Positions 4,912 to 15,790 of a stretch of DNA of 64,000 nucleotides are shown piece by piece (position 1 is the first letter of the stretch; each line of letters begins with the position of its first letter). A program made the translations under genes and the position numbers. The notes under the pieces are model-generated. The model saw only the letters and a list, made by a program, of their open reading frames with translations. It had not been told where the DNA came from and did no database searches. Origin of the DNA: Rebecca billardiae RCC1528 (taxonomy: Eukaryota; Protista; Haptophyta); NCBI GenBank assembly GCA_965240325.2, contig OZ251227.1:1798001-1862000 (forward strand), read 5' to 3'.

Positions 4912-5813
4912 GCGCTTGGCGCGCGCGCGGCGCGGCGCGCTGCGGCCGTCGAGTTGCCATGCGAAGGCGGCGCGTTGCGTGCGTGGCATCGGAACGCTGC
5001 CGTGCTCCGCACTGCGCCCCGCAGCTCGCTCCTCGTCGACTTTGCTGCGCCTACGATCAGCGCGCACGCGAGCGTCGCCTCGGAATGAGCAGCCCGCGCC
5101 GGCCTCAGCCGTGAGCACCCGCCTGGCGCGCGATGCGATCAACTCGGGGCACGAGCTGTGGCTGAGCGAGGAAACATGTGCCTGCGCGCAAGCCGCGCCG
5201 CCTTGAGACATCGATCGTGCGCGTTGATGCAGCTTCAGACGGCTGTCGACGAATGCCCATCAGCCTGCACGAGCCTTGCATGCAGTGGAGATGAAACAAC
5301 AGACCGTGAGCGCCCTGAAGCGATGAATAGGAGTCTTCGGGTTGCGTGTGCGCACAGCAACTCGTGTACATCTATGCATCGCATGCGCGCGTGGCTGCCA
5401 TCATGCCTTGCTTAAGCAGTTGCTCTGATAAGGAGTCCTTTCAAGGACACCGCGACAATGCGCAAGGGCAAGAAGAATAGTTGCGTGCAAGGTGCGTGCC
5501 CTGCTCACGATCGGTGTCTCAAGGCGGCGCGGCTTGCGCGCAGGCACATGCTTCCTCGCCCAGCCGCAGCTCGTGCCCCGAGTTGATCGCATCGCGCGCC
5601 AGGCGGGCGCTCACGGCTGAGGCCGGCGCGGGCTGCTCATTCCGAGGCGACGCTGGCGTGCGCGCTGATCGTAGGCGCAGCAAAGTCGACGAGGAGCGAG
5701 CTGCGGGGCGCAGTGCGGAGCACGGCAGCGTTCAGATGCCACGCACGCAACGCGCCGCCTTCGCATGGCAACTCGACGGCCGCAGCGCGCCGCGCCGCGC
5801 GCGCGCCAAGCGC
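4912..5813. repeat. Long inverted repeat IR1: arms 4912-5219 and 5506-5813 (308 bp), 286 bp spacer
   Basis: The arms are reverse complements with about 7 substitutions by manual comparison. Mirrored ORF translations appear in the track. Confidence 0.95.
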
Positions 5814-5868
5814 TGGTGCGCCGCAGTCCGGGTTGGCGGCCGCCACTGCCGCAGCGCCAGTCCGGAAG

Positions 5869-5900
5869 GCAAAGCCCCCGCAGCGGGGGCTTTGCTTTTC
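5869..5900 (+). other. Perfect 12-bp GC-rich hairpin followed by TTTT
   Basis: GCAAAGCCCCCG-CAG-CGGGGGCTTTGC-TTTTC. Confidence 0.8.
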
Positions 5901-6023
5901 AGGAGCGTGTGGCAGGATCCCGGGAACGCCCTTGACTGTTTCTCGCGGCGGAAGACGTCGAACGCGACGAAAATAATATCCTGGTCAGCATGGAGGCGAC
6001 GATGCGGATGGACGACTGACAAA

Positions 6024-6488
6024 ATGGTACACCGTCGGAGCCGCTACCTGGTCGGGCGCGTCGAGTCCGCGGAGGATCTCCCCCCATCGATCTCGGCGCA
6101 AGTACTCCTCTCGCAGATCAGGGCGAGCATTGCCGACCTGCACGGGGACTTTGGCGCCGGCAGTGTTGCGCCCTCGCTCAGCGTGAAGTTCTTCCATCCA
6201 GCGTGGCGCTTGTTTGTCGTGCGCGTCGACCGCGAATTCGTGCACATGCTGCGCTCTGCGATGGTGAGCATGTCATTCCTCTCTCAGCGCGAGGTGCGGC
6301 TACGCGTGGTGCGCACGGCAGGCAGTGGGCGCTCGTGCAGGCGCCATGCTGGCAGTCTCCTCACTGCTCAAGTCCTCGAACGGCTTCGCAGCCGCGACGG
6401 TGGCTTGGCCCTGCCCCCACTGGAGCGCGACCGACTTCAGCAGCTGCGGCTCCAGGCGGAAGCAGAATTGGCGCGAATGCAGCCCTGA
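6024..6488 (+). CDS. POP5: RNase P/MRP subunit Pop5/Rpp14 family
   Basis: MVHRRSRYLV...IRASIADLHGDFGAG...LSVKFF...FVVRVDRE...VVRTAGSGRSC matches the Rpp14/Pop5 pattern. Confidence 0.82.
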   Translation: MVHRRSRYLVGRVESAEDLPPSISAQVLLSQIRASIADLHGDFGAGSVAPSLSVKFFHPAWRLFVVRVDREFVHMLRSAMVSMSFLSQREVRLRVVRTAGSGRSCRRHAGSLLTAQVLERLRSRDGGLALPPLERDRLQQLRLQAEAELARMQP

Positions 6489-6834
6489 TTCATGTGCGGG
6501 AATCCGCTGCCCTGATTCCTGTGCGGGAATCCGCACTTCTGACGATGTCGATGACTCGGAGAGTCTGAGGCTCGTCACTCGTCAGAGTCGTCAGCGAGTC
6601 TAGCAAATAAGCTATAAGTAAAATTTCGTCGAAAACCTGCTGATGCGCGCTGCTGATAAATAAACACGACATAGCTAGTTAGATAGCTGAGTCTGTTCAA
6701 GTGTGATTGCTCCGGGCAGTCGCTGCCTGACCGCAGTCTGTTCTAAAGTGTGAATGCGGCGGTCCTGCGGGCAGTCGGCGTCGCTGCCTGACTAGTGACT
6801 GACCGCCGGCCGCCACGGGGCCCGTAGTCTCGTC

Positions 6835-9800
6835 TCAATGCAGCTGCGCGCCCCCGTTGCCGCTCTGGGCGCTTTCCTGGGAGACGCCGCGCTTCCTCCT
6901 GAGCCACGACGATGGCGCAGCCGGCGCCGCGGCGGGCTCCGCAGCGGCGACAGCCTTGGCTGCCTTGCGCGGCTTGATCGTGCCGACCGGGCCAATGACG
7001 GACAGCACGACGGGCGCGAACGCGAGCCCAGAGAAGAGGCCAAGGAAGATGGTGCCCCACATGAAGATGAAGAACGTGCGGAAGACGACCGAGTCCGAGC
7101 CCGCGAGGAAGAGCGTGCCGAGCAGCGTCGAGCCGCCCGCGTTGAGGATGGACGAGCCCATCGTCTTGAGCGCGTGCGTGACCTTCGCCTCGCGGTCGGC
7201 GTACGGCGCGTTGTTGTACGCGTGGCCTAGGTGCACCGAGTAGTCGATGGCGAGGCTGCGCGCGCGCGCCGAGGACGCGCGCGCATGCCGAGGGCGCGTG
7301 GGCACCGCGCGCGCCGCGCGCGCCGCGCGCCGCGCGCGGCCGCGCGCACCCGAGCGCGATGAGCAGCGAGATGCACGAGATGCAGTTGAAGTTGAGCCCG
7401 GCGAGGCTCATCACGCTGAGCAGCTGCAGGTCGATGCACACCACCGAGAACACGGCGAGCAGCGAGATGAAGAAGGGCAGGAAGCACAGCGTGCACAGCG
7501 CGATCACGATCACAACCACCTGCGGGCGCAGAGCGCGGCGGCGCAGCGCGCGTGGAGGGCGCGGCCCGTGAGCATGGCGCCGGTCGGCCGCGCGCGTGCC
7601 GCCCGGCCTGCGCCGCCGGGGAGCGCCGCCGCCCTGGGCGCGGAGCCGGCGCGCGCGGCTGTGCGCGCGCGGCTGTGCGCGCACCAGCAGGTTCTTCAGC
7701 CCGACCCTCACGATCACGGAGTCGAACTTGCCAAACTCGAAGCGCACGTGGTACACGTACCCGTCCATCTTGTGCCCCGTGCTGTGCATGCTCTCGCGGG
7801 AGACGCTGCGCACGCACGGTGCGCGGGCACGGCGCGCGTGAGGACGCGTGAGGGCGCGCACGGCGCGCGGCGCGGCAGCCATGCGCGGCGTCGCGCCGCC
7901 GCCGGCCGCCGCGCGGCAGCCCGCCAGGCGCGCGCGCGCGCGCGCGCACGCCCCTCTTCCCCTCCTCGCCAGCCACGCATGCCCGCCCCGTTCCCTCCCG
8001 CGCGCGCACCGGTCGAACACTTCCTGCATCTCCTCCCACATGCGGTAGCACTCCACCATCACCTGCGGCAACACCGCCGAGACGACGACGCGGTGCGCGC
8101 CGATGATGCAGCCGCGCCCGGACTCGCACGCGGCCGGCACGTGCCCGCCGTCGCTCGGCTCGGTGTCGCAGCCGCCGGGCGTAAGCTCGGCAACGCGCAC
8201 GTCCATCCGAAACGCGCTGCCGCCCTTGATCAGCGGGATGTCCTCCTCCGACTCCTCCGTCGAGTTGTCCGCGCTCGCGGCGGGGTCGGGCGTGCACACG
8301 CCGCACGTGACCGGGCAGGTGGAGCGCACGATGTTGTGCCCCACGCCGCTCTCGCACCGCGACACGGCCTCGAAGCAGTGGTACCCGCCCGAGAGGTGCT
8401 GGAACTTCTCCTCCTTGTTCACGCACGGCTTGGCCTTGCGCTTGCTGTGCTTGTCCTCCTCGCCCTCCTCCTTCTCGTCGTCGCCACCACGCCGATGGCG
8501 GAGCTGGCGGCCGCGCGCGCGTGCGGCCGAGGGCGCGCGCGCGCCGCCAAAGCGCCGCCAGCGCCGCGCGTCCTCCCGCAGGTCGAGGGCGAGCGCGCTG
8601 TCGACGCCGTCGAGCTTGCGGTGGCGAGCGAGCACGCGCTCGATCGCCGCGCGCGGCACGCGCCGCTCGAGCTCGCGCCCGTACCCGCCGCCGCGCGCGC
8701 CGCGCGCCGCGCGCGCGAGCCTCCGTCCGGGCAGCTGGTCGTCCAGCGCGTCTCCCTCGTCCTCCTCCGTGGCGTTGAACGTGTCGAAGCCGCACTCGCG
8801 CATCTCGGTGTCCTCGAGGAAGTCGAGCAGGTTGCACATGGAGTAGAGCGAGGTGCCATCGCACTCGGACCACTTGATGTAGTCCTCCAGCCAGTCCGAC
8901 GCGATGTGGTGCACGTACGGCAGCTTGAGCAGCTCGTCGAGCACGTTGATCACGGTCGCAATCTCGTCCGGCACCGTCGGGTTGGTGCGCTCGAAGACGA
9001 CGGCGATCTTGCCCGGGAACTCGCCCGAGAAGTACTCGTCCACGTCGTCGAGGAAGTCCATGATGATCGAGTCCTCCGGCACCGTCTGCCTGTACGGCAG
9101 CCCGGGCTGGATCTCCTTCACGACGAAGCACGCGAACACGACAGGCGCGAGGTAGAGGAAGATGACCAGCAGCTTGACGGGCGGGGAGAGCAGCAGCCGC
9201 GCGTACGCGCCCATGAACTTGTTGCCGGGCACCTCGGCGTTGGCGGGCCAGTGGGGCTGGGCGCGCCGGCCGGCGCGGCCGGCGCGGCCGCCGCCGCCGC
9301 TGCTGTCGCCGCCGCCGCCGCCGCCGCCGCCATCGCCGCCGCCGTACGACAGCCGGGGCGGCGCGGTGGCCGTATCTCGCTTGAGGCTGCCGGGCGGTTG
9401 CAGCTCGTACTCGAGCGGCGGCGTGTGCTGCCCCGTGCTCGGCTCCGAGCTGTCGGCGGCGCCGAGCACCTCCGCGTGGTGCGCGCGGTGCAGCGAGACG
9501 CGCGACGGCACCGTGCCGCCCCAGCCCGCCTGCTGCGCGTCGTACTGCTCGCGCGCGGCCAGCACGTCGGCCGCGTGTTGCGCCTTGTGCAGCGAGACGC
9601 GTGACGGCACGGCGCCGCCCCAGCCGGCCTGCTGCTGCTGCGCGCCGAAGCCCTGGCTGTCATCGCGGACGAGCACGCCCGCCTCGCGCGCGCGGTGGAG
9701 CGAGGCGCGCGTGGGCGCGGTGCCGCCGTACGCGCCGTAGGTCGCGCCGTCGGCGTGGTGCACCCAGTTGTAGTGCGCGACGGCCTCGGCACGCGGCGTC

Positions 9801-12084
9801 GGCGGGCTGCGTCCGCGCGGCGAGAGCGCGCCGTCCGCAGCGTGCGGCTGCGCGTGCGCACCCTCCGCCTCCGCCGCCTCGAGCTGCTGCTGCCGCTCGA
9901 GCTCCTCGTCGGACAGCACGTAGCCGGCGGGGAGGAGCGCGCCGTGCTCGCTCCCGATCGACGCGCGCGGCACGTACAGCTCGCCGTTCGGCCCGAGGAA
10001 TGGGCTGGGCGGCTCGGGCTCGGCCGCGCTCACCGCGGCGACGCGCGCGTGCGTGTCGATCGCGAGCAGCGCGCAGAAGAGGGTGAGCTGCAGCACGTAC
10101 AGGCAGCCCACGCAGCACGCGGCGGTGGTGCAGAACCACGCGTACACGGGCAGGTCGACCCAGATCCCCGTGACGAACGCGACCAGCGTGGTGAACGTCG
10201 TGACGGTGATCGCGGTGCCCGACTCGCCCATCGACTGTGAGAGCCGCACGTCCACGTCCTCGTGCTCGGGGGTCCGGTCAAACGTGTCGACGATGATGAT
10301 CATGTTGTCCACCGAGACGCCGAGCAGCATGAAGGAGACGAGCGGCGTGACGGGCGAGATGGGCGTGTTCAGCAGCGCGGTCAGCCCGAACCCCGAGGAC
10401 ATCGACAGCGCCGAGCACAGCGCGCACGAGAGCGAGAGCATGATGCGCACGCTCGAGCCGCCGTGCGCACCCGAGCCGGGCGTGTGCTGCCCGTCCTTGC
10501 CGCCGTTCGGCGTGCCGTGCGCGGCGGCCGAGCTGTCGTCGTGGCAGCGGAACTTGGAGAGCGAGACGGCGACGTACACGATCACGAAGATGAACGCGCA
10601 CGCCAGCAGCGGCGCGTCCTTCTCCACGAACGAGTTGGCCTCCTCCTCGTTGAGCTTGGTCGACCACCACGTGACCTCGAGGCTCTCGCGCTGCGCGATC
10701 TGGGGCAGCCTCTCGCGCAGCTGGTGGTGCCACAGGTCGGCGCGGCCGTCGTAGTACGCCGGGCGCGAGACGTTGAAGTAGATGGAGAGGATGAACGCCT
10801 CCGCCGAGACCCTCTTGTTCGCGTCGTCCACCTGCACGTGCCGGCTCTGGCCGAGGTCGACGGTGCCGTCGCGGACCGCGTCGTACACGGTGCGCTCGAC
10901 GTCGTCGTCCGCGTCGAGCGCGCGCTGCTGGTACTTCCACAGCTCGAGCAGCGAGGAGACGGCGCAGTACTCGTCGCCGATCTCGGGGACGTACACCTCG
11001 AGGCAGAACTGCGAGAGGACGATCGGCCTGTACGGCACGACCGGCTCGAGCTCCGCGCCGCTGCCGTCGTCGCCGTCCGCGCCCGCGAGCGCGCTCGACG
11101 GCCTGTCCGACCCCTCGGTCTCCTGCGCGAGCGACAGCGGCATCTCTGCGCGGATCGTGCGCACCTCGTTGTACAGCTCGATCGCCGAGCCGAGCGAGGC
11201 CTTGTTGATGATCGAGCCACCCGCGCGCTTGCGCATCACGATGAGCAGCACGTCGGGCAGCTCGCCGAAGTTCTCGGAGAAGCGCGTGCGCATCCGCGCC
11301 ATGTCTGTCTTCTGCGGCAGGTACAGGTAGTACGAATTCGCCTCGAACGTCATGCGCGCGAGCCCGGAGGTGAGCGCGGCGGAGAGGAGGATCGAGAGCG
11401 CGATGACGCGCCACGGCGAGCGCGCGACGATGAGGCCGAGCGCGCGGAAGAAGGGCACGAGCAGCCGCTTCACCTCGCCCTCGCCCATCGCGTTGGCGGA
11501 GGGCGAGAGCACTGCCGAGTCGAGCGCGGGCGCGTCCGAGTCGTGCGAGAGGGTGGGCGACTGGAGGCTGAGGTGCACGGGCTTGGGGGCGGCGAGCTGC
11601 AGGTGCATCGTCGCGGCGTTGCCGTTGGGCGCCGCCGCGCTGCCGTCCGGGGAGTAGGGCGCGGCGCCGGGTGCGGGCCCCCAACGCGGCTGCTGCTGCT
11701 GCTGCAGCTGCTGCTGCTGCTGCAGCAGCTGCTGCTCCGCTGGCATTGGCTCTCCATGCGGCGGCGGCTGAAAGCCGACGCGGCGCGGCGCGTCCGACGC
11801 CTGCCGCTCGCGCGCCTGCCGCTGGATCGTCGTCGCCGCCATGTCGTGCACACGCCGCAGGTTCATCGCCTGCTCAATCGGCAGGCTCTGCATCCCGTCG
11901 CCGCGGCCGCCACCGTACGCCGACGCCGACACCATCGGCGTGCCGCCGCGCCCGACGCCCGGCGGTGGCCTGCGCAGGTGGGGAGGCGGCGTCGCGCCGG
12001 GAGGCAGAGCGCGCTGCTGCTGCTGCGGCGGCGGCGGCCGGGGCTGCGACGGGTGCGGCTGCGGCTGCGGCTGCTGCTGCACGA

Positions 12085-12116
<32 letters not shown>

Positions 12117-13618
12117 ATGTGCTGTGCGTACTCCTGCCGAGCGAGGGCCATCTGGCTCAGCGCCGACGCGCGCCGGCTGCCCATGGTCCGCCGCATCGGG
12201 TCGCCGTCCTCGCGCCAGGAGACGTTGGCGTGCTGCGGCGGCAGCTGCAGCGGCGGCGGGTTCGACTGCGACAGCCGCAGCCCCCCGTCCGCGTACGCGC
12301 TCATCGCTGTGCTGCCCGTGCGCGCGCGCAGCCCGAGCGGTCGGCTGCTCGCGGGCGTTTTGGGCGACGACGCTGTCGCCTGCACCTGCACCTGCCGCCG
12401 CCGCCGGCCGGCGATAAAGGCGATGAGCGCGCAGAGGCCGAGCGAGCCCACGTAGATGGCGAGGCCGATGAACACGACCGTCTCCGTCTTGTGCCGCTGG
12501 AACCACGGCATCCCCTCCTTCGGGTTGATCGTCGTGTTGGTACCCTGCGTCTCGACCGGCTTGAACTCGATCAGCTCGACCACCGACGAGTTCAGCGCGG
12601 GGATGGCCATGCCGTGGATGGGGATGGCCTCGCTCGGGCCCTTGCCGCGCTCGAGGAAGGAGAGCCCGTGCGAGTCGCACCGGAACACGCCGTCGCTCTG
12701 CACGTTCAGCCGGCCGCGCATCTCCTCCGCCACCGTCTGGCCGGGCAGCGTGTCGTGGTGCCCCTCGATCAAGAACGCGTCAGACTCGGCGATGCCGTGC
12801 GACGCCTCGGAGGCGACCTCGTACCAGCCGGTGCGCGCGGGCTTGGCGTACGCGGTCATCGGCACGAGCTTGATCATGATCAGGATCCGCGGGCACCGCC
12901 CTTCCACCAGCCGGTCGAACACCTCCTTGTGCGACGACGACAGCGCCATCGGCAACATCTGCGCGCCGCCCTTGTCCGGGCACGACGGCTGCGGCGAGCC
13001 AATCAGACAGCACTCCCACTTGGGGTGGGTCTCGACGGTGTAGCAGAAGGCGCACGAGTCCCACGAGAGCGAACGGCAGTAGTTGTGGTCGCCCAGGCCC
13101 TGCCACTCGTTGTCGGGAGTCGGGGTGTGGCTGTGCCGGTGCGGCGACTGCGAAGACCACTTCTGGCACGTGTACCCGCCGATCGTCTTGTTCACGTGCC
13201 CGCGGTAGTCCTCGCGGTCCTGCCGCGTGAAGCACTCCTGCACCCGCTCATCCGCCAGCGAGGCTGCCAGCTCCGCGGGCGAGCCGCGCCGCGCGTGCAC
13301 CACGCCGTCCTTGGTGCACATGTAGCTGCGGAACGCCTCGTGCGACTGGACTGTGTCCGCGTACGTCGTGGATTCAGAGACGATGACGCCAGCGCAGACG
13401 GAGGAGTGGACGCGCGCGGTGTGCAGCATGGCATCACATTCATCGGAGCACAGCTCCTTCTGCTTCGAAACCTTGCACACCTTCCACACCGACGACACGA
13501 GGTCGGCGCAGTGCTTGCTCATTGACGCATCGGCCGCGCACAGGGAGGCGCTGCCGAGCAGGACGAGGAGCGAAGCCACGCGGCGAGCACCGGGCGAGGC
13601 CCATGCCGTGCACGTCAT
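6835..13618 (-). CDS. Patched/NPC1-like sterol-sensing RND membrane protein with N-terminal Kringle domain and a ShK-like module
   Basis: Signal peptide, then Kringle (DYRGHVNKTIGGYTCQKWSSQSPHRH...HNYCRS...CYT), a TM and a Q/P-rich linker. SSD with GVSVD and SMGESGTAITVTTFT. Second repeat has GLAIDYSVH and MGSSILNAGGST. ShK-like CPVTCGVC. Introns 7806-8009, 7520-7684 and 7256-7349. Confidence 0.88.
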
Positions 13619-14253: not shown

Positions 14254-15516
14254 TCAAAGAATCGCGCAGCCCGCGCAATCCCCGCTGCTGCCGCCGCCGC
14301 CGCCACCGTCACCGCCCTGACCGATGCGCTGGGGGAGCCGTGCACTCGTGTCAAGGGTGGCGCCGCGCGGGGCGATCGCTGCGCGGATTCGCTGCTCGTC
14401 CGTAGGCGTGAACTCGTTGCGGCCGATTTTGAGCTCGCGCAGGCTCTGCAGGCCGTTGCAGACCTGCAAGATGGCATCGACGGTGCGCGAGCCCAGGTTG
14501 TTGTGCACCAGCGCGAGCGTGTGCAGCTGCGCCAGCATGCCGAGCGCCTGCGGCACGTCGTCGAGCTCGTTGGACGAGACGTCGAGCGCGCGCAGCTCGG
14601 CCAGCGTGTGCACGCCGCTGAGGTCGGTGAGGTTGTTGGTGTGCAGGCCGAGCTCGATAAGCTGCGGGCAGTGCTCAATCCCGTTGGTCGTGCCCAGCTC
14701 GTTCTCCGCCGCGTTGAGCACGCGCAGCCCCGGCGCCGAGCGGAGGCCCGCCAGCGAGGTCACGTTGGCGTGCTGCACGTTGAGCCAGCGCAGGTTGGGC
14801 GCAAACCCGAGGCCGTCCAGGTTGGTCAGGTCGTTGTCGTGCGCGTCGAGCCACTCGAGCGAGGCGACGTTGCTCGCGCCGCGGAAGTTGAGCAGGTTGT
14901 TCGTCGACACGTCGAGCCAGCGCAGGTGCGGGCACGCCGTCAGGCCCTGCAGGTTGGTCAGGTGGTTGCCGCGCAGCGTGAGACGGATCAGGTTTGGGAA
15001 GCGCCCGAGCCCGTTCAGGTGCTCGATGTCGTTCCAGAAGTAGTTGGCGTGCGTGACGAGCGTGCCGTCGCCACTGTACTGCGCGTGCGCGGTATCCGTC
15101 AGGTCGCCATTCGTGAAGCTCGCCGTCACCTCCTGCTGCGCCTGCTGCTGCCCCGCCGGCGCGGCTTGCGCTTGCGCGACGGGGACCGCGCTCGCGATGG
15201 GCGCGCCGGCCTGGGGCGCGGTGACGGGCGTGGCTGTCGCGACGGCAACGGCATACGGCGACGGCTGGAAGCCCGACGTCTGCGCGTAGTACTGCGGCGG
15301 CGGCGTCGCCGGCACCGGCGTGCCCTGCGCCACCGGCACCACGTTGGGCGTGAGGAGCACCGGTGGCGGTGCCACCTGGCCAGGGTACGCGGGCGTGGCG
15401 ATGACGGGCACCGGCGTGCCGAGGGCCATTCCGCCACCCGGCTGCGAGATGACGACACCGGTCGTCGCCACCGGCTGCGCGCTCGCGACAGGCATCCCCT
15501 TGGCCACGGGCATCAT
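14254..15516 (-). CDS. Leucine-rich repeat protein with Pro/Val/Ala-rich N-terminus and C-terminal CaaX
   Basis: About 9 SDS22-like LRRs (e.g. LRWLDVSTNNL). Ends in GDCAGCAIL*. The start could be at 15618. Confidence 0.85.
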   Translation of the reverse strand: MMPVAKGMPVASAQPVATTGVVISQPGGGMALGTPVPVIATPAYPGQVAPPPVLLTPNVVPVAQGTPVPATPPPQYYAQTSGFQPSPYAVAVATATPVTAPQAGAPIASAVPVAQAQAAPAGQQQAQQEVTASFTNGDLTDTAHAQYSGDGTLVTHANYFWNDIEHLNGLGRFPNLIRLTLRGNHLTNLQGLTACPHLRWLDVSTNNLLNFRGASNVASLEWLDAHDNDLTNLDGLGFAPNLRWLNVQHANVTSLAGLRSAPGLRVLNAAENELGTTNGIEHCPQLIELGLHTNNLTDLSGVHTLAELRALDVSSNELDDVPQALGMLAQLHTLALVHNNLGSRTVDAILQVCNGLQSLRELKIGRNEFTPTDEQRIRAAIAPRGATLDTSARLPQRIGQGGDGGGGGGSSGDCAGCAIL

Positions 15517-15790
15517 GGCTTCGGTGTCGCGGCGGCGAAGAGCCAGGCGGAAGGGGCGCGGCGGGGCGGCTTGCTTGGGCTGGCGCACCGGCACGATGGC
15601 AGCCGCCCCTATGTTCATTCAAGTCCGGGAGTTTAGCAAAGTCCGGCGCCTAAAAACGGCAGCATCTCCGGCTTGGCAGCAAGGGCCGATTTAAAAAGCA
15701 AGCAGCAGCACGGCAGCGTGGCGAGCTGAACGGCTCTGCCGGAGAGCTGCCCGACAAAGCAGCGCGAGGCCATCGCTGCCGCGCGCACTC

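What the first reader, a model, noticed from the sequence alone, without database searches (positions are those of the whole stretch)
6835..13618. Kringle ectodomain fused to a complete Patched/NPC1-type RND transporter, with an inserted ShK-like module
Seen: one continuous frame encodes signal peptide, Kringle, TM, a long cytosolic poly-Q/P linker with an IQ-like AATTIQRQAR, and a 12-TM Patched-like unit with both GxxxD motifs. The second luminal loop holds RRL/RKL/RQL motifs followed by a Cys-rich ShK-like CPVTCGVC. Known: NPC1 has a sterol-binding N-terminal domain at this position, Patched has none, and Kringles bind protein or lysine ligands. Inference: a ligand-gated, possibly calmodulin-linked sterol/lipid transporter-receptor analogous to Patched signalling in a unicellular alga. 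I do not recognise this architecture.
Basis: partly seen in the sequence, partly recalled or inferred. Interest (0 to 1): 0.75.

Follow-up and report, generated by a model that had tools for sequence, protein, structure and literature searches.

The report
Kringle-headed NPC1-like lipid transporter gene
A GC-rich marine alga carries one real gene that puts a blood-clotting-type "kringle" binding module on an NPC1/Patched-type membrane lipid transporter; this domain combination turned up in only a handful of unnamed sequences from relatives, and its function is untested.

Summary
A minus-strand gene (13618 to 6835) encodes about 2106 residues. In order they are: signal peptide, Cys-rich head, Kringle (Pfam E 9e-13), a conserved unassigned domain, an extra membrane helix, and a roughly 320-residue cytosolic linker. 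The linker carries an invariant IQ-like motif. A 12-helix sterol-sensing RND core follows, with both GxxxD motifs and a borderline ShK-type six-cysteine module in the second outer loop.

One correction: it is not one continuous frame. There are three short GC-rich introns. Two stay in frame and are read through; the third shifts the frame and splits the second GxxxD.

The whole layout recurs in three relatives at 41-58% identity, one of them a complete MMETSP transcript, so it is one gene. In 1.84 billion representative proteins, Kringle and RND co-occurred only in this family (three full-length proteins plus three fragments, none named).

By profile, the core is closest to NPC1/NPC1L1, and the 13-helix topology matches NPC1. 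The Kringle head sits where NPC1 has its sterol-binding domain.

Calmodulin binding gets only weak in-silico support. Ligand gating and Patched-like signalling are untested. No RNA runs were listed.

Verdict: a new variant of a known kind, of moderate interest.

The parts
8010..13618 (-). Exon 1. Start Met at 13618; 1869 codons plus 2 nt. Encodes signal peptide through most of outer loop 2.
   Evidence: ORF and translation. tblastn of P0002 and P0003 is colinear from 13534 to 8012. GC3 is 0.85-1.00 throughout.
7806..8009 (-). Intron 1. 204 nt, GTGCGCGC...CAG, in frame with no stop, so ORF callers read through it.
   Evidence: DNA reading. There is a gap against the transcript-derived P0002. 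The relative's genomic contig L001 has an intron at the same position.
7685..7805 (-). Exon 2. End of outer loop 2 (GYVYHVRFEFG... block).
7520..7684 (-). Intron 2. 165 nt, in frame.
   Evidence: L001 has an intron at the same position.
7350..7519 (-). Exon 3. TM8-TM10, ending ...SLLIALG.
   Evidence: 88% identity to P0003.
7256..7349 (-). Intron 3. 94 nt, shifts the frame and splits the second GxxxD (G|LAID). Absent from L001.
6835..7255 (-). Exon 4. LAIDYSVHLGH..., TM11-12 and the C-terminal tail. Stop at 6837-6835.
   Evidence: Pfam MMPL E 7e-5. The NPC1 TM segment aligns GISVEFCSH to GLAIDYSVH.
13529..13618 (-). Probable signal peptide, aa 1-30.
   Evidence: Basic residues followed by a hydrophobic stretch at aa 14-32. 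It aligns with the N-terminus of the complete transcript ORF P0002. No signal-peptide predictor was available, so this is an inference.
13238..13528 (-). N-terminal Cys-rich region, aa 31-127. Conserved, with no known family.
   Evidence: Conserved Cys columns. No Pfam hit. No paralogue in the own genome.
13001..13219 (-). Kringle domain, aa 134-206.
   Evidence: Pfam PF00051 E 9e-13. PDB kringles down to E 1e-13 for single domains. 44-51% identity to deuterostome kringles.
12548..12976 (-). Post-Kringle conserved alpha/beta domain, aa 215-357. Unassigned.
   Evidence: Strongly conserved. It is the only confidently modelled part of the ectodomain, at pLDDT 70-91. No Pfam, Atlas or fold match.
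12404..12487 (-). Extra transmembrane helix TM0, aa 378-405, followed by RRRR.
   Evidence: Hydropathy 2.47. Conserved in the homologues.
11441..12403 (-). Cytosolic linker, aa 406-726. The low-complexity poly-Q/P is specific to this genome.
   Evidence: Length and sequence vary among homologues apart from one motif. GC3 is about 0.9-1.0.
11810..11857 (-). Invariant IQ-like motif RRVHDMAATTIQRQAR, aa 588-603.
   Evidence: R588 to Q601 and R603 are invariant in four taxa. No Pfam IQ hit. Predicted complex with the own calmodulin exon scored 0.54 against a best control of 0.01, graded 'weak support'.
10634..11440 (-). TM1 (aa 727-756) and outer loop 1 (aa 757-995).
   Evidence: Part of loop 1 aligns to the NPC1/NPC1L1 middle luminal domain. 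Pfam NPC1_MLD matches are only E 0.013-0.1 in the homologues.
10052..10633 (-). TM2-TM6, the sterol-sensing domain, with GVSVD at 10307-10321.
   Evidence: Pfam PF12349 E 7.5e-26 and PF02460 E 2.8e-21. Nearly invariant across homologues.
9203..10051 (-). Middle cytosolic loop, aa 1190-1472. Low complexity, with an internal repeat.
   Evidence: Variable among homologues. GC3 0.90-1.00.
9107..9202 (-). TM7, aa 1473-1504.
   Evidence: Hydropathy 2.55.
8720..8725 (-). Conserved dibasic RR (aa 1632-1633) inside the variable insert of outer loop 2.
   Evidence: These are the only invariant residues in that insert. A role as a cleavage site is an inference only.
8294..8425 (-). ShK/ShKT-like six-cysteine module, aa 1732-1775.
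   Evidence: Pfam ShK scores 21.1 bits against a cut-off of 20.9 when the module is scanned alone. It is sub-threshold (E 0.017-0.053) within the whole proteins. All six Cys are conserved. The top two PDB profile hits are the ShKT peptides AcK1 and aurelin, at E 0.27 and 0.47.

Best explanation
Shown:
- This is a single four-exon gene for a protein of about 2106 residues.
- It has 13 membrane helices and belongs to the eukaryotic sterol-sensing RND family. Among solved proteins it is closest to NPC1/NPC1L1.
- The N-terminal luminal domain of NPC1 is replaced by a different head: a Cys-rich region, a Kringle and an unassigned alpha/beta domain.
- The head is tethered by an extra helix (TM0), so it lies on the same, non-cytosolic side as the two large loops.
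- Both intramembrane GxxxD motifs (TM4 GVSVD, TM10 GLAID) are intact.
- The layout is conserved across several divergent relatives.

Inferred:
- The core works like NPC1, Patched or Dispatched. It would use a cation gradient through the TM4/TM10 acidic pair to move a sterol or other lipid along its outer domains.
- The Kringle head and the ShK-like module in loop 2 are protein-contact or ligand-contact modules. They would capture or present a partner or cargo, much as the NPC1 head takes cholesterol from NPC2.
- The invariant IQ-like motif in the otherwise free-drifting cytosolic linker is a docking site for calmodulin or a related EF-hand protein, which would couple transport to calcium.
For: One gene:
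- The ORF is continuous, with GC3 of 0.85-1.0 across the linkers.
- A complete MMETSP transcript ORF (P0002) and two genomic or metagenomic ORFs (P0001, P0003) have the same order of parts.
- Fragments P0011, P0014 and P0037 bridge the parts.
- Exons 3 and 4 abut seamlessly on P0002 and P0003.
- Introns 1 and 2 are conserved in L001.

Family:
- Pfam SSD and Patched hits.
- PDB profile hits: NPC1L1/NPC1 E 1e-23 to 1e-20 against PTCH1 1e-11 for the N-half. NPC1, PTCH1 and NPC1L1 score 1e-16 to 1e-15 against DISP1 1e-12 for the C-half.

Topology:
- Hydropathy profile and positive-inside residues.

Kringle:
-.

ShK-like module:
-.

IQ-like motif:
- Invariance across homologues.
- Weak support from the complex test: score 0.54, best control 0.01. 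That mark was reached by 51 of 78 solved complexes and 2 of 108 mismatched pairs. At 0.60 or under, however, only 5 of those 78 solved complexes and all 4 passing mismatches fall. Runs agree in at least 79% of contacts, and partner pLDDT is at least 65.
Against: - There is no expression data for this genome; no RNA run was listed.
- No substrate, localisation or binding data exist.
- The canonical kringle lysine pocket is only partly kept. Against plasminogen K4 (alignment), one of the two Asp residues becomes Ser, Lys35 becomes His and Tyr74 becomes Cys, so lysine binding is doubtful.
- The ShK assignment is borderline.
- Pfam IQ does not match, and the motif lacks the G and the second basic residue of IQxxxRGxxxR.
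- The calmodulin chain used lacked its first exon, and CaM-peptide complexes can score from memory.
- The AlphaFold models were poor: ectodomain mean pLDDT 49.7 and loop 2 36.6. No structural test of the head or the ShK module was therefore possible.
- An in-frame intron hidden inside a low-complexity linker cannot be excluded without RNA.
Confidence: 0.6

Rival explanations
1. Patched-type receptor. The Kringle head binds a secreted protein ligand, and this gates the sterol-pumping activity of the core, so that the protein works mainly as a signalling receptor.
For: - A protein-binding module sits on the outer face of an intact SSD transporter.
- The cytosolic docking motif is conserved.
- Kringles are reused in several mosaic surface receptors of this genome, with at least 33 matches (notes).
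Against: - No ligand, no Smoothened-like effector and no Hedgehog-like partner was looked for or found.
- The profile is nearer NPC1/NPC1L1 than PTCH1.
- Nothing distinguishes gating from simple cargo capture.
Confidence: 0.15
2. Dispatched-like exporter. The protein releases a lipid-modified or membrane-bound cargo from the cell surface. It would be activated by proteolysis at the conserved RR in loop 2, as Dispatched is cleaved by furin.
For: - RR is the only invariant feature of the variable insert that precedes the ShK-like module.
- DISP1 is a significant match for the C-half, at 4e-12.
Against: - DISP1 scores below NPC1 and PTCH1 for the C-half, and is absent from the N-half hits at E <= 0.001.
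- Cleavage is pure inference.
- Dispatched is cleaved in loop 1, not loop 2.
Confidence: 0.1
3. Gene-model artefact. Two neighbouring genes, a Kringle membrane protein and an RND transporter, are joined by a chance open frame, which is easy to get in DNA of 70% GC.
For: - Very GC-rich DNA here gives long spurious ORFs. Antisense ORFs of 1087 and 785 aa have no family match.
- No RNA from this organism was available.
Against: - The same fusion occurs in a complete transcript ORF of a relative and in two other taxa.
- The linker holds an invariant 14-residue motif.
- Fragments bridge the parts.
- GC3 periodicity is unbroken.
- The topology needs TM0 plus the linker to place the head outside.
Confidence: 0.04
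4. Adhesion or structural surface protein. The RND core would no longer transport and would serve only as a membrane anchor for the Kringle and ShK-like modules.
For: The long disordered linkers and mosaic outer modules resemble adhesion receptors. No transport data exist.
Against: - The membrane core is the most conserved part. TM4-TM6 are nearly invariant, and both GxxxD motifs and the TM10 His are kept.
- This pattern points to selection on transport chemistry.
Confidence: 0.05

Closest known systems
NPC1 / NPC1L1 (Niemann-Pick C1 family, eukaryotic SSD-RND transporters)
   Same: - Best profile matches among solved structures: E 1e-23 to 1e-20 for the N-half and 4e-16 for the C-half.
- 13-helix topology. 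An extra first helix carries an N-terminal luminal or extracellular domain ahead of a 12-TM core.
- Sterol-sensing domain with a GV(S)VDN-type TM4 motif, and a TM10 G-x-x-x-acidic motif followed by His.
   Different: - The N-terminal domain is not the NPC1 sterol-binding NTD. There is no PF16414 hit. Instead there is a Cys-rich region, a Kringle and an unassigned domain.
- The loop between the extra helix and TM1 is about 320 residues long and carries an invariant IQ-like motif.
- Loop 2 carries an ShK-like insert.
- The NPC1_MLD match is only marginal.
Patched (PTCH1) and Patched-related / PTCHD proteins
   Same: SSD-RND core with two large outer loops and acidic TM4/TM10 residues. The C-half matches about as well as it matches NPC1.
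   Different: - Patched has 12 helices and no extra N-terminal outer domain.
- The N-half match is nine or more orders of magnitude weaker than to NPC1/NPC1L1.
- No Hedgehog-type partner is known here.
Dispatched (DISP1)
   Same: Same superfamily. The C-half matches at E 4e-12. A conserved dibasic site in an outer loop recalls the furin activation of Dispatched.
   Different: It matches more weakly than NPC1 and PTCH1, and no N-half hit reached E <= 0.001. The dibasic site is in loop 2, and cleavage is unproven.
Kringle-bearing animal receptors (ROR1/2, Kremen, plasminogen family)
   Same: A bona fide Kringle on the outer face of a membrane protein, 44-51% identical to deuterostome kringles.
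   Different: - Those receptors are single-pass or secreted proteins. None is fused to a transporter.
- The lysine-binding pocket is only partly conserved here.
Other Kringle mosaics of the same genome (LNR-kringle pair; LRR/FG-GAP/kringle polycystin-like receptor; earlier scan notes)
   Same: The same shuffled extracellular module. There are at least 33 Kringle matches at roughly 20 loci in this genome.
   Different: - Only this locus joins a Kringle to an SSD core.
- Its Cys-rich head and post-Kringle domain have no paralogue.

Membership tests
Eukaryotic SSD-containing RND transporters (Pfam Patched PF02460 / Sterol-sensing PF12349) | Significant match to the sterol-sensing five-helix bundle | tested here: met
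   PF12349 at 91.3 bits (cut-off 22.3) and PF02460 at 76.3 bits (cut-off 23). The three homologues give the same result.
Eukaryotic SSD-containing RND transporters (Pfam Patched PF02460 / Sterol-sensing PF12349) | A 12-TM core built as two 1+5 halves, each with a large extracytoplasmic loop after its first helix | tested here: met
   Hydropathy on the exons and on the complete homologue P0002. Both halves align to NPC1, PTCH1 and DISP1.
Eukaryotic SSD-containing RND transporters (Pfam Patched PF02460 / Sterol-sensing PF12349) | Intramembrane GxxxD/E motifs in TM4 and TM10 (cation relay) | tested here: met
   GVSVD at aa 1100-1104 is invariant. GLAID appears after removal of intron 3 and is identical in P0002 and P0003. 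It aligns to NPC1 GISVE.
NPC1 family proper | N-terminal cholesterol-binding NPC1_N domain (PF16414) | tested here: not met
   There is no PF16414 hit in the window protein or its homologues. The distant hits P0004 and P0005 do carry it.
NPC1 family proper | Extra N-terminal helix giving 13 TM, with the head domain on the luminal or outer side | tested here: met
   TM0 at aa 378-405 is followed by RRRR, and a signal-like N-terminus is present. This is a hydropathy inference, not an experiment.
NPC1 family proper | NPC1-type middle luminal domain | tested here: inconclusive
   PF22314 reaches only E 0.013 and 0.1 in two homologues, below the cut-off. The profile alignment to NPC1/NPC1L1 does extend into that domain.
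Patched (Hedgehog receptor) | Binds a Hedgehog-type ligand and regulates a Smoothened-type effector | not testable with these tools
   No ligand or effector was examined.
Kringle (PF00051) | Match above the Pfam cut-off, with the triple-disulfide cysteine framework | tested here: met
   48.8 bits against a cut-off of 34.3. The cysteines align with plasminogen kringles, and there are two extra conserved Cys.
Kringle (PF00051) | Canonical lysine-binding pocket (two Asp, basic pair, aromatic walls) | tested here: not met
   From the alignment to plasminogen K4: Asp55 to Ser; Asp57 kept; Lys35 to His; Arg71 to Lys; Trp62 to Phe; Trp72 kept; Tyr74 to Cys. The K4 residue numbering comes from established knowledge.
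ShK / ShKT domain (PF01549) | Six-Cys pattern ending C-x3-C-x2-C, with a Pfam match above the cut-off | tested here: inconclusive
   All six Cys are conserved and the ending is CP(V/I/L)xCGxC. The module alone scores 21.1 bits against a cut-off of 20.9. Within the whole proteins it reaches only 14.5-16.1 bits. The best PDB profile hits are ShKT peptides, at E 0.27 and 0.47. No usable structure model was obtained.
IQ calmodulin-binding motif (PF00612) | IQxxxRGxxxR consensus or a Pfam match | tested here: not met
   No Pfam hit even at E <= 10 on the isolated 41-aa stretch. Only the IQxxxR half is present.
IQ calmodulin-binding motif (PF00612) | Binds calmodulin or a light chain | tested here: inconclusive
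   The predicted complex with the own-genome calmodulin exon scored 0.54 against a best control of 0.01, graded 'weak support' and possibly from memory.

The most novel reading that the evidence does not exclude
A unicellular alga has built, independently of animals, a Patched-style ligand-gated lipid pump. An extracellular protein ligand caught by the Kringle/ShK modules would switch an NPC1-like sterol transporter. Its output would be read in the cytosol through a calmodulin-type protein docked on the invariant IQ-like motif, directly joining lipid transport, extracellular sensing and calcium signalling in one polypeptide.
Probability: 0.1. Interest if true: 0.8.

Novelty: new variant of a known kind. 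Interest (0 to 1): 0.5.

Why it matters
SSD-RND proteins (NPC1, Patched, Dispatched) move sterols and lipids, and what differs between them is the outer domain that decides what they meet. This gene is a natural domain swap at exactly the NPC1 head position. A protein-binding Kringle head replaces the sterol-binding one, a toxin-type ShK module is added to loop 2, and a conserved cytosolic docking motif is present.

If studied, it could show how such transporters acquire receptor-like behaviour outside animals. It could also show what the many SSD (at least 32 matches) and Kringle (at least 33 matches) genes of this algal lineage do, for example in sterol handling, cell-cell contact or virus interactions.

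There is a practical lesson too. The in-frame, stop-free GC-rich introns make ORF-based gene callers insert junk residues or truncate the protein, as happened in P0001.

Tried and rejected
- **RNA evidence.** The look-up of sequencing runs was busy at first and then listed no RNA run.
- **AlphaFold2, ectodomain.** With a 5-sequence alignment the mean pLDDT was 49.7. The Kringle itself was not modelled; only aa 224-357 were confident. VIA-align wide was dominated by the low-confidence N-terminal helices, with Z <= 6.1 and no meaning. Foldseek against the PDB gave no hit at E <= 0.001. The ESM Atlas shape search gave TM <= 0.26. The post-Kringle fold therefore stays unassigned, which is not evidence that it is new.
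- **AlphaFold2, outer loop 2.** P0003 was the first row. Mean pLDDT was 36.6, which is unusable, so there is no structural test of the ShK-like module.
- **ESM Atlas feature search of the post-Kringle domain.** No usable hit.
- **Pfam on short pieces.** The IQ stretch, the N-terminal Cys-rich region and the post-Kringle region gave nothing.
- **A mis-framed alignment.** A5 was discarded and redone as A6.
- **Literature.** No paper joins kringle with haptophytes or Emiliania, or kringle with Patched in algae. Two E. huxleyi transcriptome papers list Patched/SSD genes that are life-stage-specific (PMC2784329) or induced in virus-recovered cells (PMC12489294). These are not shown to be this gene.
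- **Neighbouring genes.** An LRR protein lies at 14254-15618 on the minus strand and a Pop5/Rpp14 gene at 5481-6488 on the plus strand. They give no functional link. Synteny with L001 is not conserved.
- **Organism.** It could not be named with these tools. 'Haptophyte/pavlovophyte' comes from earlier scan notes only.
- **Complex test.** It gave weak support only and is not used as evidence of binding.

Full report
**What is in the sequence.** The stretch holds a 2379-codon open frame on the minus strand, 13882 to 6743. The first ATG is at 13618. Residues are numbered from that Met below.

A Pfam scan of the frame gives three hits:
- a Kringle at aa 134-206 (E 9e-13, 48.8 bits, cut-off 34.3);
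- a sterol-sensing/Patched domain at aa 1058-1191 (E 7.5e-26 and 2.8e-21);
- a sub-threshold ShK hit at aa 1747-1775 (E 0.053).

The last 400 residues of the long frame alternate between hydrophobic, family-like stretches and Arg/Ala-rich nonsense. That pattern pointed to introns that happen to stay open.

**Gene model.** Reading the DNA shows three short GC-rich introns with GTGCGCGC...CAG ends:
- 8009-7806, 204 nt, in frame;
- 7684-7520, 165 nt, in frame;
- 7349-7256, 94 nt, which shifts the frame.

tblastn of two homologues places their C-terminal parts on exactly these exons. Exons 3 and 4 abut without a gap on the homologues around ...SLLIAL-G-LAIDYSVH....

The coding sequence is 5609 + 121 + 170 + 421 nt, which is 2106 codons plus a stop at 6837-6835. 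The second GxxxD motif exists only after splicing.

GC3 is 0.85-1.00 along all of exon 1, low-complexity linkers included. The third-position signal moves to another frame after intron 3.

All searches used exon references or the homologues.

**One gene or two.** The word search over 5.8 billion proteins found three proteins with the same order of parts, all carrying Kringle plus SSD:
- P0002, an MMETSP transcript ORF marked complete, 2039 aa;
- P0003, from a JGI metagenome contig, 1856 aa;
- P0001, from a Logan genomic contig, 1536 aa, which ends in a read-through intron.

Identity is 41-58%, depending on the region. The full alignment shows strong conservation of the head (aa 64-320), the RND core and loop 2. 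The cytosolic linkers drift freely, except for one invariant block, RRVHDMAATTIQRQ.

The genomic contig of P0001 (L001) has introns at the same two positions as introns 1 and 2, and none at the position of intron 3.

A transcript in a relative, conserved intron positions and a conserved motif inside the linker make a chance fusion of two genes very unlikely. No RNA run for this genome could be listed.

**How rare is the layout.** I searched a profile running from the Kringle to the end of the SSD against 1.84 billion cluster representatives. Only P0001 and P0002 matched over the whole profile.

I then scored all fetched proteins locally with sub-profiles:
- Kringle and RND together occur only in P0001-P0003.
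- Three fragments belong to the same family: P0011 (post-Kringle end plus RND), P0014 (motif plus RND) and P0037 (Kringle plus post-Kringle).
- 46 proteins were RND-only and 107 were Kringle-only.

The nearest RND-only relatives are unnamed metagenomic proteins at 32-36% identity. No NCBI or UniRef protein with this layout appeared in any search. The word searches see only proteins of 0.55-1.75 times the query length, and two of them scored only the 8000 candidates that shared most words with the query.

In the alga's own 72-Mb assembly there are at least 33 Kringle matches and at least 32 SSD matches, but only this locus has both. The Cys-rich head and the post-Kringle domain have no paralogue.

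**Topology and closest family.** Hydropathy gives the following order:
- a signal-like N-terminus;
- an extra helix at aa 378-405, followed by RRRR;
- TM1 at about aa 727-756;
- TM2-6 at aa 996-1189;
- TM7 at aa 1473-1504;
- TM8-12 in exons 3 and 4.

That makes 13 helices, with the head on the same side as the two large loops. This is the NPC1 solution.

Profiles against all PDB sequences rank the families as follows:
- N-half: NPC1L1/NPC1 first (E 1.8e-23 to 3.7e-20), against PTCH1 at about 3e-11 to 2e-10.
- C-half: NPC1, PTCH1 and NPC1L1 roughly equal (4e-16 to about 3e-13), ahead of DISP1 at 4e-12.

NPC1 GISVEFCSH aligns with GLAIDYSVH.

The protein fails one defining NPC1 feature, the NPC1_N sterol-binding head. 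I therefore call it NPC1-like in build and not a member of NPC1 proper.

**The outer modules.** The Kringle is genuine. It is 44-51% identical to kringles of hemichordate and echinoderm proteins, and it aligns to all five plasminogen kringles. Read against plasminogen K4, only part of the lysine pocket survives, so its ligand is open.

The six-cysteine module in loop 2 scores 21.1 bits against a Pfam ShK cut-off of 20.9 when scanned alone. All six Cys and the CPxxCGxC ending are conserved. Its best PDB profile hits are two ShKT peptides, AcK1 and aurelin, at non-significant E-values. I call it ShK-like and borderline.

It sits between two variable stretches. The only invariant residues of the preceding insert are RR at aa 1632-1633.

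The post-Kringle domain was the only part of the head that AlphaFold modelled with confidence (pLDDT 70-91). No family or fold match was obtained for it.

**The cytosolic motif.** It has the AAxxIQxxxR half of an IQ motif, but no Pfam IQ match.

I tested it against the alga's own calmodulin. The test used exon 2 only, residues 36-149 of a typical calmodulin, taken from L028. The complex test returned 'weak support':
- score 0.54, best control 0.01;
- the mark was reached by 51 of 78 solved complexes and 2 of 108 mismatched pairs;
- scores of 0.60 or under were reached by only 5 of those 78 solved complexes, and by all 4 mismatches that passed;
- runs agree in at least 79% of contacts, and partner pLDDT is at least 65;
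- the tool warns that such a pass may come from memory of solved CaM-peptide complexes.

I treat this as showing likeness to a calmodulin-binding helix, not as showing binding.

**Most likely working.**
- Shown: an intact, conserved SSD-RND core with both acidic motifs; a conserved outer head; and a conserved cytosolic motif.
- Inferred from the established mechanism of NPC1, PTCH1 and DISP1: cation-driven movement of a sterol or lipid along the outer domains. The Kringle and ShK-like modules would supply protein or ligand contacts. The IQ-like motif would supply a calcium-sensor docking site.

The Patched-like signalling reading, a Dispatched-like exporter with RR cleavage, a pure adhesion role and a gene-model artefact are kept as rivals, with lower odds.

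**Context and novelty.** Earlier scan notes describe other Kringle mosaics in this genome and call it a haptophyte or pavlovophyte. My Kringle count agrees with the first point. The organism's identity was not tested here.

No paper in the library joins Kringle with Patched/NPC1 in algae.

The finding is a new domain architecture within a well-known transporter family. It is restricted, as far as these searches see, to a few related algae. It is real and unusual, but no function is shown.

Noticed in passing
window 7256-8009 (minus strand); L001 about 6780-7040: The three introns all start GTGCGCGC, are about 80-90% GC and contain no stop codon. Two have lengths that are multiples of three. 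ORF-based callers therefore read through them: the public protein P0001 carries such intron-derived junk and is truncated.
   Followed up: partly
window 10262-13525 (+) and 7247-9604 (+): There are antisense open frames of 1087 and 785 aa opposite the gene, with no family match. They look like spurious ORFs caused by the 70% GC content.
   Followed up: partly
G000:C32:898145-899121 (L028, L029): Two calmodulin-like exons with identical EF-hand scores lie head to head about 600 bp apart on opposite strands. This appears to be an inverted duplicate of the calmodulin gene, and each copy lacks its first roughly 35 codons in the same frame, so an intron lies upstream.
   Followed up: no
G000, many contigs: Dozens of EF-hand pair matches lie inside very long open frames of 4,000-12,000 aa, for example C10:2860319, C11:861286 and C18:664320. 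This suggests a large family of giant EF-hand-bearing proteins, or long GC-driven frames.
   Followed up: no
G000: Both the Kringle family (at least 33 matches at about 20 loci, some tandem as at C14:465046-466603 and C15:2212754-2214718) and the SSD family (at least 32 matches) are strongly expanded in this 72-Mb genome.
   Followed up: partly
window 9440-9700 (minus strand, aa about 1305-1390): The middle cytosolic loop contains an internal direct repeat (…AGWGG-VPSRVSLH-A-H…, twice) that is absent from the homologues. It looks like a recent local duplication in low-complexity coding sequence.
   Followed up: no
window 5481-6488 (+) and 14254-15618 (-): The flanking genes are a Pop5/Rpp14 RNase P/MRP subunit (Pfam E 3e-19), convergent with the 3' end, and an LRR protein (LRR_4 E 2e-18) upstream on the same strand.
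   Followed up: partly
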